Below the pieces are notes generated by a model. It saw only the letters and a program-made list of their open reading frames with translations, did not search any database and was not told where the DNA came from. Position numbers and translations under genes: made by a program. Source: Mobula hypostoma (lineage: Eukaryota). Taken from it: 64,000 nucleotides of DNA. Location: assembly GCF_963921235.1 (NCBI RefSeq), contig NC_086119.1, forward strand, positions 46,252,001-46,316,000, read 5' to 3'. Shown here in pieces: positions 60,265-63,113 of the stretch (positions are counted from its first letter, which is position 1; each line of letters opens with the position of its first letter).

Positions 60265-61110
60265 CAGAATCAGATTCAGGTTTAGTATCGCTGGATATGA
60301 AATCTGTTGTTTTGTGACAGCAGTACATTGCAATACATGACAATAAAAACTATAAATTACAATAAGTTAATATACAAAAAGGAAATCAAATTAATTAAGT
60401 AGTGTGAAAAGAGAGGGGAAAAGTACCAAGGTAGTGTACATGGGGTCCATTCAGAAATCTCATAGTGCAGGGGAAGAAGCTGTTCCTGAAATGTTTATTG
60501 TGTGTCTTTGGGATCCTCTACCTCTTCCTCGAAGGTGGAAATGAGGAGAGGGCACGTCCTGGGAGGTGGGGGTCCGTAATGATGGGTGCCTCCCTTTTGG
60601 GGCATCGCCTTTTGAAAGTGCTCTGGGTGCTGGGAAGGCTGGTGCCCATGATGGGGCTGGCTGAGTTTATAAGTTTCTGCAGCTTTTTCCGATCCTGTGC
60701 AGCGGCCCCTCCGCACCAGATGGTGATGCAGCCAGTCAGAACGCTCTCCACGGTATGTCTGTAGAAGTTTGCAAGTGTCTTTGGTGACATGCCAATTTTC
60801 CTCAAACTCCTAATGAAATATAGCTGCTCTTGTGCCTTCTTTGTAATTGCGTCAATATGTTGGGCCCAGGATAGGTCATTGGAGATGTTGACACCCAGGA
60901 ACTGAAACGTTCCTGCCCTTTCCACTCTGACCCCTTGATGAGGTCTGTTGTGTGTTCCCTTGACTTCTCCTTCCTGAGGTCCACAATCAACTCCTTGGTC
61001 TTACTGACATCGAGTGTAAGGTTTTTGCTGTGACACCACTCAGCCAGCTGATCTATCTCACTCCTGTACGCCTCCTTGTCACCGTCTGAAATTCTGCCAA
61101 CATGGTTGTT
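60265..61110 (-). mobile_element. Rex1/Babar-like LINE 3' part
   Basis: ORF 60518-60925 reads FQFLGVNISNDLSWAQHIDAITKKAQEQLYFIRSLRK...ESVLTGCITIW. It has an (AATCTG)n tail. Confidence 0.88.
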
Positions 61111-61315
61111 GTGTTATTGGCAACACGGACTCCTTATGCACTCTCCATTGGGTTTCAACATGAAAGTGGGTCCTTTGACCTAGCTCGTCCCTGCCAATCA
61201 TGGTGTCCACCAAGATAGTCTCATTTATCTGTGTTTGATCTATATCCCTCCAAACCTTTCCTACCCGTCTATAGTACTTACCCACATGCCTTTTGGAGGT
61301 TGTTATTGTATCTAC

Positions 61316-61366
61316 AACTCTGCCATGGACGGTTGCCAAGCCCGGCTGCAAAGGACGAAGGTTGGA
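61316..61366 (+). ncRNA. Degenerate twister ribozyme motif
   Basis: AA-CTCT-GCC-atgga-CGG-TTGCC-AAGC-CCGG-ctgcaaa-GGAC-GAAGG-ttgga, compared with the twister layout UAA-P2-GCC-..-CCGG-UCCC-AAGC-CCGG-..-P2'-GAGGG-P1'. Confidence 0.7.
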
Positions 61367-61554
61367 CATGTGGCTAGCAAGCTCATCCTTAAAACCTAGA
61401 GCTCCAGAGGCTCCAAAGACCCCAGGAGAGGAAGGATACACCAAGAAAATGGACTACACCTGGGGACAGCTTGAAAGACTAGCCTGGGGCAGAGGACTCC
61501 GGCAAGCTACTGCCAGCAGCCTATGACCCAGTAGGGGTGATGAGCTTAAGTAAG
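61316..61554 (+). mobile_element. Short bipartite RTE-derived retroposon with 5' twister-like motif
   Basis: An RTE 3' peptide remnant (YTWGQLERLAWGRGLRQ) and a (TAAG)n tail. TSD tattgtatctac (61304-61315) / tattgtacctac (61555-61566). Confidence 0.8.
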
Positions 61555-62053
61555 TATTGTACCTACTATACATCAACCACTGTCTCTGGCAACATATTCC
61601 ATGTATCCACCACACTCTGCATGAAGAAGTCGTCCTTCAGTTCCCCTTTAACTTCTTCACCTCTCACCTTAAACCTGTGCTTTCTAGTTGTAATTCTCCT
61701 TCGCTAGGAACAACACCGTGTATGTTCACCCTATAGATGCTCCATATGATGTTTATACATGTCTATATGGTCATGCCTCAATCTTTTATATTCCAAGGAA
61801 TAAAGTCCTGGCCTCCCCAACGTTTTGTTGTCCGGAAAACCTTTGTATCTTTTCATTAAACTCCATCCCAACGTAACCTGCCTCAACTCTACAACCCTCT
61901 GAAAAACACAATGCTTCAATCTGCTCTCTTCTATCTCCTCAGATTTCTTTGCTCCACTAGTGGTGTCCATTCTTCAAGCACTAACAGTGCTAGAAGCACA
62001 TTTAAGGTGAAAAGCAGACGCAAAAGAAGTAAAAATAGACATTTTCATGGGCT

Positions 62054-63113
62054 CTCACGAGGAAACCTGCAGATGCTGGAAATTCAAGCAACACACATCA
62101 AAGTTGCTGGTGAACGCAGCAGGCCAGGCAGCATCTCTAGGAGGAGGTACAGTTGGCGTTTTGGGCCGAGACCCTTCGTCAGGACTAACTGAAAGAAGAG
62201 CTAGTAAGAGATTTGAAAGTGGGAGGGGGAGATCCCAAATGATAGAAGACAGGAGGGGGAGGGATGGAGCCAAGAGCTGGACGGGTGATTGGCAAAAGGG
62301 ATATGAGAGGATCATGGGACAGGAGGCCTAGGGAGAAAGAAAAGGGAGAGGGGGGGAAACCCAGAGGATGGGCAAGGGGTATAGTCAGAGGGACAGAGGG
62401 AGAAAAAGGAGAGAGAGAAAAAGAAAAAGAATGTGTATGTATAAATAGATAACGTTCGGGGTACGAGGGGGAGGTGGGGCATTAGCGGAAGTTTGAGAAG
62501 TCAATGTTTATGCCATCAGGTTGGAGGCTACCCAGACGGAATATAAGGTGTTGTTCCTCCAACCTGAGTGTGGCTTCATCTTTACAGTAGAGGAGGCCAT
62601 GGATAGACATGTCAGAATGGGAATGGGACAGTAGAGGAAGCCACACTCAGGTTGGAGGAACAACACCTTATATTCCGTCTGGGTAGCTTCCAACCTGATG
62701 GCATGAACATTGACTTCTCAAACTTCCGCTAATGCCCCACCTCCCCCTCGTACCTCATCCGTTATTTATTTATATACACACATTCTTTTACTTTTTCTCT
62801 CTCTCCTTTTTCTCCCTCTGTCCCTCTCACTATACCCCTTGCCCATCCTCTGGGTTTTCCCCCCTCTCCCTTTTCCTTCTCCCTGGGCCTCCTGTCCCAT
62901 GATCCTCTCATATCCCTTTTGCTAATCAACTGTCCAGCTCTTGGCTCCATTCCTCCCTCTCCTGTCTTCTCCTATCATTTTGGATCTCCCCCTCCCTCTC
63001 CCACTTTCAAATCTCTTACTAGCTCTTCTTTCAGTTAGCTCTGACAAAGGGTCTCAGCCCGAAAAGTCGACTGTACCTCTTCCTAGAGATGCTGCCTGGC
63101 CTGCTGCGTTCAC
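62054..63113. mobile_element. PLE inverted (fold-back) insertion
   Basis: The minus arm at about 62057-62628 and the plus arm at 62637-63113 are near-identical inverted copies. A 13-bp TSD attttcatgggct lies at 62041-62053 and 63115-63127. Degenerate hammerheads occur at 62151-62186(-) and 63037-63072(+). Confidence 0.92.

What the first reader, a model, noticed from the sequence alone, without database searches (positions are those of the whole stretch)
61304..61566. Twister-ribozyme-headed RTE retroposon whose 5' end sits exactly at the twister cleavage site
Seen: after a 12-bp TSD (11/12 match), the insert starts at 61316 with AACTCTGCC...CGGTTGCCAAGCCCGG...AAAGGACGAAGGTTGGA. It continues with a ggctagcaagctcatcc..taaaa block, an RTE C-terminal remnant and a (TAAG)n tail. 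Known: twister ribozymes cleave between U and A of the UAA loop, and twister motifs head RTE-clade elements in Schistosoma mansoni. Inference: the template was a twister-processed RNA, since the insert starts at A1 and lacks the 5' P1 strand. This points to a ~240-bp non-autonomous twister-RTE family in this genome. The flanking tcta could supply a weak P1 partner for tgga, but this copy has P2 and T1 mismatches and is probably inactive.
Basis: partly seen in the sequence, partly recalled or inferred. Interest (0 to 1): 0.85.

Follow-up and report, generated by a model that had tools for sequence, protein, structure and literature searches.

The report
Decayed twister-headed mini-RTE retroposon copy
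This 239-bp insert is an old, worn copy of a short jumping element made from the two ends of an RTE-type LINE, and its first base sits at the cutting site of a twister self-cleaving RNA, a design already described in blood flukes and shown here in a cartilaginous-fish genome.

Summary
A 12-bp target-site duplication (11/12) brackets a 239-bp insert (61316-61554) that starts AACTCTGCC and ends in (TAAG)2.

On its own this copy is only a weak twister match (Rfam twister-P1, 16.9 bits, E 0.71). The family settles the question.
- In contigs of four related species, 28 family copies break into unrelated flank exactly at 61316.
- Family variants restore canonical twister letters: P2 CUCC/GGAG, L4 GUCCCAAGC, L1 GAGGG.
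- The same P3-less head scores 35-51 bits (E 7e-5 to 5e-9) in eight other loci.
- Two of those are full-length elements, with an APE-RT ORF and a (GTAA)n tail. One is in a loach, where the TSD abuts the AAC.

The window insert aligns to that loach element at its first about 75 nt (80%) and its last about 120 nt (71%). It is therefore an internal-deletion, non-autonomous derivative.

This copy is probably catalytically dead (P2 mismatch, L4 insertion, T1 G-to-A). It is also old, because the same insertion is present in all four species.

The mechanism is known: Liu et al. 2021 (Schistosoma Perere-3) and a 2020 remark by de la Peña. This is a new member of a known kind.

The parts
61304..61315 (+). 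5' target-site duplication TATTGTATCTAC. Its last bases UCUA could pair with UGGA (61363-61366) as a fortuitous, offset P1.
   Evidence: family D1, 92% to the 3' copy
61316..61366 (+). Relic of a P3-less type-P1 twister ribozyme lacking the 5' P1 strand. Segments: L1 AA 61316-17; P2 61318-21 with 61353-56 (C at 61356 breaks one pair); L2 GC 61322-23 (T2); junction 61324-29; P4 61330-32 with 61342-44; L4 61333-41 (one extra base, and U/G in place of C); L1 3' strand GAAGG 61357-61 (canonical GAGGG); P1 3' strand UUGGA 61362-66.
61368..61386 (+). Hairpin conserved directly after the twister in all relatives. Stems 61368-73 and 61381-86, loop CUAGCAA. 4 of 6 pairs survive here.
   Evidence: helix 5: two pairs with compensatory changes, 90.7% of cells paired
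61387..61424 (+). A-run and 5'-UTR-derived remnant up to the internal-deletion junction (about 61420-61435). This copy has small indels relative to the family majority.
   Evidence: (loose-end consensus before 61425 and behind 61388/9)
61425..61546 (+). Remnant of the last ~40 codons of the RTE ORF, in the frame of 61395. There is a premature TGA at 61524-26, where most family copies read C at 61526. Majority letters at 61485, 61486, 61489 and 61500 give the LAQDRxxW reading.
61547..61554 (+). (TAAG)2 microsatellite tail. The family's natural stop codon TAA (61551-53) lies inside it.
   Evidence: (GTAA)n is reported for Perere-3
61555..61566 (+). 3' target-site duplication TATTGTACCTAC

Best explanation
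61316-61554 is an old, decayed copy of a non-autonomous 'mini-RTE'. It is an internal-deletion derivative that keeps two parts of a ~3-kb twister-headed RTE-clade LINE (Perere-3-like lineage). The first part is about 110 nt of the 5' end: a P3-less twister ribozyme without its 5' P1 strand, a conserved hairpin, and a piece of 5' UTR. The second part is about 130 nt of the 3' end: the last ~40 codons and the (TAAG)n tail.

Shown here:
- the TSD;
- homology of the head and tail to full-length elements;
- the family 5' ends piling up on A1 of the AAC;
- the canonical twister core in better-preserved copies.

Inferred, from the Schistosoma experiments and the anatomy: source copies have no 5' boundary of their own. 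They are transcribed from upstream host or read-through promoters. The twister cuts between N-1 and A1, so the RNA begins at A1. The partner RTE's endonuclease/reverse transcriptase recognises the shared 3' end and copies the RNA into a new site by target-primed reverse transcription. Each new copy therefore starts at A1, next to a fresh TSD that may or may not offer a P1 partner. P1 is dispensable for cleavage.

This particular copy has three core lesions and is most likely no longer self-cleaving or mobile.
For: TSD 11/12.

The window insert aligns to the full-length loach element L010 at its first base onward (61316-61389 to L010 2342-2416, 80%, E 3e-12) and at its end (61435-61554 to L010 5003-5120, 71%, E 2e-8). 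L010 itself has the TSD CTAAAGTCT on both sides, a twister-P1 hit of 35.4 bits (E 7e-5) starting at AAC, an APE+RT ORF and a (TAAG)n tail.

L002 is a complete 3257-nt element: twister at 1-50, a 1003-aa ORF with Exo_endo_phos + RVT_1 + DUF6451, and a (GTAA)n tail. Its ORF is 67-70% identical to Schistosoma proteins. One of these (L009) has a P3-bearing twister (53.7 bits) upstream and a (GTAA)n tail. That matches the description of Perere-3 by Liu et al..

Family 5' ends: loose ends before 61316 in 8, 9 and 11 contigs, with only 0.44-0.51 agreement in the flanks.

Variants restoring the core: 61356 C>G in most contigs; one base of 61333-35 missing in about half; sub-family strings with CGGTCCCAAGCCCGG and GGAGGAGGGTTGG.

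At least 60 contigs per run share the same UTR-to-tail junction sequence before 61425, at 0.72-0.77 agreement. So the deletion derivative itself amplified.

P1 is dispensable and P3 expendable.

This copy is dead-looking: 16.9 bits and fold z = +1.28.

The same insertion is bridged by contigs of organisms B, D and E (records 25, 9, 17).
Against: No cleavage or RNA 5'-end data exist for this genome. No RNA run held the stretch and only contigs could be laid.

The autonomous twister-headed partner was not recovered from this genome itself. An unchecked first-reader note says a full-length RTE here carries an HDV-like ribozyme instead.

All twister hits, even the good relatives, stay below Rfam's gathering score of 67.2, because they lack P3 and P1.

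The four runs are related species, so some of the 28 'independent' 5' ends may be orthologous copies counted more than once.

The RTE-clade label rests on architecture and on identity to Schistosoma elements, not on a phylogeny with named references.
Confidence: 0.82

Rival explanations
1. The uniform 5' end at A1 is set by transcription initiation (an internal or downstream-acting promoter), not by ribozyme cleavage. The twister fold would then be kept for another role, such as translation initiation or recognition by the reverse transcriptase.
For: Sequence data alone cannot tell a cleaved 5'-OH end from a capped start. Liu et al. report that the cleaved twister supports translation of the downstream ORF, so the fold has a second use.
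Against: The catalytic nucleotides, not just the helices, are invariant across phyla: A1, A2, L4 and GAGGG. In S. mansoni cleavage was shown in vitro and in vivo at this bond. No Pol III-type head is present.
Confidence: 0.1
2. The twister likeness of this stretch is a chance resemblance, and the insert is simply a 5'-truncated or rearranged LINE fragment.
For: This copy scores only 16.9 bits (E 0.71), is not significant in the whole-window scan, and does not fold better than shuffles.
Against: Homologous heads in eight other loci score 35-51 bits, with E down to 5e-9. Family variants repair the defects. The alignment to full-length elements starts at base 1 of both.
Confidence: 0.02
3. This very copy is still an active ribozyme, using the TSD-derived UCUA as the P1 partner of UGGA.
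For: A 4-bp UCUA/UGGA pairing is possible with a 1-nt offset. Natural twisters tolerate many imperfections.
Against: It has a C-C mismatch in the 4-bp P2. It has an extra base plus a C-to-U/G change in L4. It has a G-to-A change in the GAGGG strand, leaving at most one Watson-Crick and one wobble pair in T1, which the review calls key for the active structure. A 4-bp match at one of a few registers is expected by chance in several percent of sites (my estimate).
Confidence: 0.05

Closest known systems
Perere-3 (RTE clade) of Schistosoma mansoni with 5' twister 'T-variant' ribozymes (Liu et al. 2021, PMC8501958)
   Same: Twister at the extreme 5' end, with the TSD abutting the AA of the cleavage site. 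Identical variable helices (P2 CUCC/GGAG, 3' strand UUGG). Same GUCCCAAGC L4 and GAGGG in the family. (GTAA)n = (TAAG)n tail. The partner ORFs are 67-70% identical to Schistosoma proteins.
   Different: The host is a cartilaginous fish, not a flatworm. P3 is replaced by a 5-6 nt junction (CAUGGA). This element has lost the whole APE-RT ORF except about 40 codons, so it is non-autonomous. This copy is mutated in P2, L4 and T1.
P3-less type-P1 twisters such as Oryza sativa Osa-1-4, and the P1-less 'mini-twister' (review PMC5408937)
   Same: P2-P4-T1-T2 architecture without P3. Activity without P1 was shown for mini-twister.
   Different: Those are isolated ribozymes or engineered constructs with no established link to a retroelement. 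The comparison with the Osa sequence rests on my memory, not on a tool result.
HDV-like ribozymes at the 5' end of R2, RTE and other LINEs (Eickbush; Ruminski et al.; cited)
   Same: Same logic: a ribozyme that cuts at its own 5' edge frees the element RNA from a read-through transcript and stays on the element.
   Different: A different ribozyme class and fold.
LINE-derived internal-deletion non-autonomous elements and SINEs mobilised through a shared LINE 3' end (e.g. eel UnaSINE/UnaL2, cited)
   Same: A short element sharing the partner LINE's 3' end and tail.
   Different: No tRNA/5S/7SL Pol III head. The head is the LINE's own ribozyme-bearing 5' end.

Membership tests
Twister ribozyme (type P1; Rfam RF03160) | Highly conserved L1/L4 nucleotides (AA at the cleavage site, L4 GUCCCAAGC, L1 GAGGG) | tested here: not met
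   This copy reads UUGCCAAGC, with an extra base, and GAAGG. The feature is met in family sub-lineages and relatives, so the family qualifies and this copy is a relic.
Twister ribozyme (type P1; Rfam RF03160) | 4-bp P2 and 3-4-bp P4 | tested here: inconclusive
   P4 is intact (CGG/CCG plus a G-C pair). P2 is 3 of 4, with C at 61356. Most family contigs carry G there. 97% of P2 cells and 92% of P4 cells are paired in alignment A3.
Twister ribozyme (type P1; Rfam RF03160) | Pseudoknots T1 (3 WC pairs, L4-L1) and T2 (GC of L2 with GC of L4) | tested here: not met
   T2 is possible. T1 is reduced to at most C-G plus U-G in this copy. Both are complete in the relatives.
Twister ribozyme (type P1; Rfam RF03160) | Score at or above the Rfam gathering cut-off (67.2 bits) | tested here: not met
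   16.9 bits here. Relatives score 35-54 bits with E 7e-5 to 6e-10. They are below the cut-off because P3 and the 5' P1 strand are absent.
Twister ribozyme (type P1; Rfam RF03160) | Self-cleavage between N-1 and A1 | not testable with these tools
   Only indirect evidence: family 5' ends pile at A1.
Twister-headed RTE (Perere-3-like) retrotransposon | TSD directly adjacent to the AA of the twister cleavage site | tested here: met
   the same is seen in the loach element L010
Twister-headed RTE (Perere-3-like) retrotransposon | (GTAA)n-type 3' repeat immediately after the ORF end | tested here: met
   (TAAG)2 at 61547-54 with the family stop codon inside it
Twister-headed RTE (Perere-3-like) retrotransposon | Single APE + RT ORF | tested here: not met
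   Only about 40 C-terminal codons remain. It is a non-autonomous derivative, not an autonomous member.
Twister-headed RTE (Perere-3-like) retrotransposon | Sequence homology of the head and tail to full-length members | tested here: met
   E 3e-12 and 2e-8 to L010; L002
Twister-headed RTE (Perere-3-like) retrotransposon | Placement of the partner ORF in the RTE clade by phylogeny | not tested
   Inferred from the ~3.2-kb single-ORF architecture, the near-absent 3' UTR, and 67-70% identity to twister-bearing Schistosoma elements.
Canonical SINE | tRNA-, 5S- or 7SL-derived Pol III head | tested here: not met
   No tRNA found by ARAGORN. No such Rfam hit.

The most novel reading that the evidence does not exclude
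Cartilaginous fishes would carry a high-copy, SINE-like family that has no promoter of its own and depends on twister self-cleavage of host read-through transcripts to define its RNA. It would belong to one twister-RTE lineage whose ORFs are 60-74% identical across flatworms, snails, amphioxus and several fish groups. That lineage would therefore have spread partly by horizontal transfer, for example between aquatic hosts and their parasites.
Probability: 0.3. Interest if true: 0.55.

Novelty: new member of a known kind. Interest (0 to 1): 0.4.

Why it matters
It extends the only experimentally supported biological role of twister ribozymes, 5' processing of RTE-type retrotransposon RNA, from schistosomes to vertebrates.

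It also shows that a very short deletion derivative can ride on the same mechanism. That gives a natural set of P1-less, P3-less twisters with known 'birth' ends for testing how much flank a twister needs in vivo.

For genome annotation, it explains a class of ~240-bp repeats and many 'orphan' fish twister hits. It also flags that Rfam's gathering score misses this whole lineage.

Tried and rejected
1. Rfam at gathering and at E<=10 on the whole window found no twister. The hit appears only in a short-range search.

2. blastn of the insert against the window found no second copy.

3. An HMMER search of 1.84 billion representatives with the 43-aa remnant returned only spurious bacterial repeat proteins. 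This copy is too decayed and too short for that route.

4. Supplementary files of the two key papers are not held. I could not check whether cartilaginous fishes are already in their twister lists.

5. DNA for the bichir and lungfish homologues could not be fetched.

6. A related loach RTE with a (GAT)n tail (L008) has no twister, so not every RTE lineage carries one.

Only the majority letters and loose-end strings reported by the tool were used.

9. I did not treat the UCUA/UGGA P1 idea as evidence, because it is within chance expectation.

Full report
**What is in the sequence**

The window shows TATTGTATCTAC at 61304-61315 and TATTGTACCTAC at 61555-61566, 11 of 12 identical. Between them lies a 239-bp insert that begins AACTCTGCCATGGACGG and ends with two TAAG units.

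No other copy exists in the 64-kb window. No tRNA-like head is present.

The insert sits inside an older repeat. On the minus strand this repeat still reads as a LINE C-terminus.

**This copy on its own**

Rfam finds nothing at gathering threshold in the window, and nothing for twister at E<=10 in the whole-window scan. In a 371-nt search, twister-P1 (RF03160) aligns 61311-61365 at 16.9 bits, E 0.71. The P3 stem is deleted in that alignment.

The conserved blocks recognisable in this copy are:
- AA-N4-GC;
- CGGU..CCAAGCCCG;
- AAA-N4-GA.GG.

A relaxed descriptor of these blocks hits only here and never in 300 shuffled windows. That descriptor was chosen after seeing the sequence.

The stretch does not fold better than shuffles (z = +1.28).

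Judged against the twister architecture summarised in the Gebetsberger and Micura review, this copy has three lesions:
- a C-C mismatch in the 4-bp P2 (61356);
- an extra base and a C-to-U/G change in L4 (61333-61335);
- A instead of G at 61359 in the GAGGG strand.

The last two together leave T1 with at most one Watson-Crick and one wobble pair. P4 and T2 are intact. Alone, this copy would not justify the claim.

**The family in this genome and its relatives**

Logan contigs of four DNA runs from four related organisms were laid on the region at 80% likeness.

The head (61316-61389) is a repeat, with 17-33 contigs per run. The tail (61425-61556) is far more abundant, with about 100 or more contigs per run.

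Contigs that reach the 5' edge diverge into unrelated sequence exactly before 61316 in 8, 9 and 11 contigs of three runs. Flank agreement is only 0.44-0.51, and the loose parts are up to 255 nt or more. Just five contigs diverge at 61315, 61317 or 61320. So the family 5' end is the first A of AAC. Because the four runs come from related species, some of these ends may be orthologous copies counted more than once.

Family letters repair this copy's defects:
- 61356 is G in most contigs, giving P2 CUCU/GGAG.
- One base of 61333-61335 is missing in about half of them.
- More divergent members, seen as loose-end strings, read CGGTCCCAAGCCCGG and GGAGGAGGGTTGG, which are the canonical L4 and L1.

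About 40 to 60 contigs per run share the same sequence immediately upstream of 61425, at agreement 0.72-0.77. That sequence resembles the 5' UTR of full-length relatives. The head-to-tail deletion derivative therefore amplified as such.

Contigs of organisms B, D and E bridge this very junction with 2-9 differences (records 25, 9, 17). So this insertion predates their divergence.

**Relatives elsewhere**

A descriptor for a P3-less head with Schistosoma-type helices found seven metagenome contigs. All start at AAC after unrelated flanks. They score 38-51 bits with twister-P1, E 2e-5 to 5e-9.

L002 is a complete 3257-nt element. It has the twister at 1-50, a 1003-aa ORF with Exo_endo_phos, RVT_1 and DUF6451, and a long (GTAA)n tail.

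Its ORF has 60-74% identical homologues in five or more Schistosoma species, gastropods, amphioxus, bichir, lungfish, loaches and a goby.

A Schistosoma curassoni copy (L009) carries a P3-bearing twister (53.7 bits, E 6e-10) about 125 nt upstream of the ORF, and a (GTAA)n tail. This matches the Perere-3 description.

A full-length copy in the loach Misgurnus (L010) has CTAAAGTCT on both sides. It starts AACTCCACCATGGACGGTCCCAAGCCCGG (35.4 bits, E 7e-5) and ends in (TAAG)n.

The window insert aligns to L010 from its first base (61316-61389, 80%, E 3e-12) and to its 3' end (61435-61554, 71%, E 2e-8). Its reading frame aligns to the last residues of the L002 ORF.

The block after the twister is a conserved hairpin with two compensatory pairs among nine sequences.

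**Mechanism**

Liu et al. 2021 showed for S. mansoni Perere-3 (RTE clade) that:
- twister variants sit at the element's 5' end;
- they cleave in vitro and in vivo;
- they are co-transcribed with the element;
- the TSDs abut the AA of the cleavage site;
- the TSD supplies the new 5' P1 strand;
- GTAA repeats end the element.

P1 is dispensable for cleavage, and P3 is absent in about 20% of twisters.

The same model fits here, as set out under the best explanation: transcription from upstream, self-cleavage before A1, then target-primed reverse transcription by the partner RTE through the shared 3' end.

The anatomy, the homology and the clustered 5' ends are shown here. Cleavage, and the choice of partner in this genome, are inferred.

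**Comparison and novelty**

The principle is published (Liu et al. 2021). De la Peña's 2020 review also states that truncated twisters are conserved at the 5' end of RTE-superfamily elements. Twisters in fishes are known as well.

In the held literature I found no description of twister-headed RTEs or their mini-derivatives in vertebrates. The supplementary lists could not be read.

I therefore rate this a new member of a known kind. Compared with Perere-3 it has a new host group, is P3-less, and is a non-autonomous deletion derivative. This particular copy is a dead relic.

Those notes are unchecked and were not used as evidence.

Noticed in passing
window 61368-61386; L001-L007 and L010 heads (alignment A3): A 6-bp hairpin with loop CUAGCAA, followed by an A-run, lies directly after the twister's 3' strand in every relative, from metagenome contigs to loach and this genome. 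Two of its pairs show compensatory changes. Its role is unknown; candidates are RNA stability, translation, or an alternative partner for the orphan P1 strand.
   Followed up: partly
hits (P0004-P0123): ORFs of this twister-RTE lineage are 60-74% identical across flatworms, gastropods, amphioxus, bichir, lungfish, loaches and gobies. That is unusually high for such distances and suggests horizontal transfer. Two NCBI entries are labelled as bacterial MAGs (Cetobacterium sp., Kangiellaceae bacterium) and are probably host-DNA contamination of the bins.
   Followed up: no
L008 1260-1500 and 4440-4520: A related full-length RTE in Paramisgurnus has a (GAT)n tail and no twister hit upstream. It does have a similar ggctagg...aaaaaa block. 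So RTE lineages differ in their 5' heads. An unchecked first-reader note (s1-141875) reports an HDV-like ribozyme on a full-length RTE in this genome.
   Followed up: partly
window 61304-61315 / 61555-61566; L010 around 2330-2341 and 5120-5135: Both the window copy and the loach copy have TSDs of about 12 bp. The first bases of each TSD (TA / GTA) continue the TAAG tail repeat. This is consistent with microhomology between the RNA tail and the nicked target during priming.
   Followed up: no
window 61000-61303 and 61567-61700, minus strand: The insert landed in the 3' part of an older LINE read on the minus strand. That ORF fragment has an FFMQSVVDTWNMLPETVV-type motif. A separate RT fragment lies at 60518-60925 (-). 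The flanks are themselves multi-copy.
   Followed up: no
window 62554-62660, both strands: There are weak palindromic mir-4520-model hits on both strands (27 bits, far below gathering).
   Followed up: no
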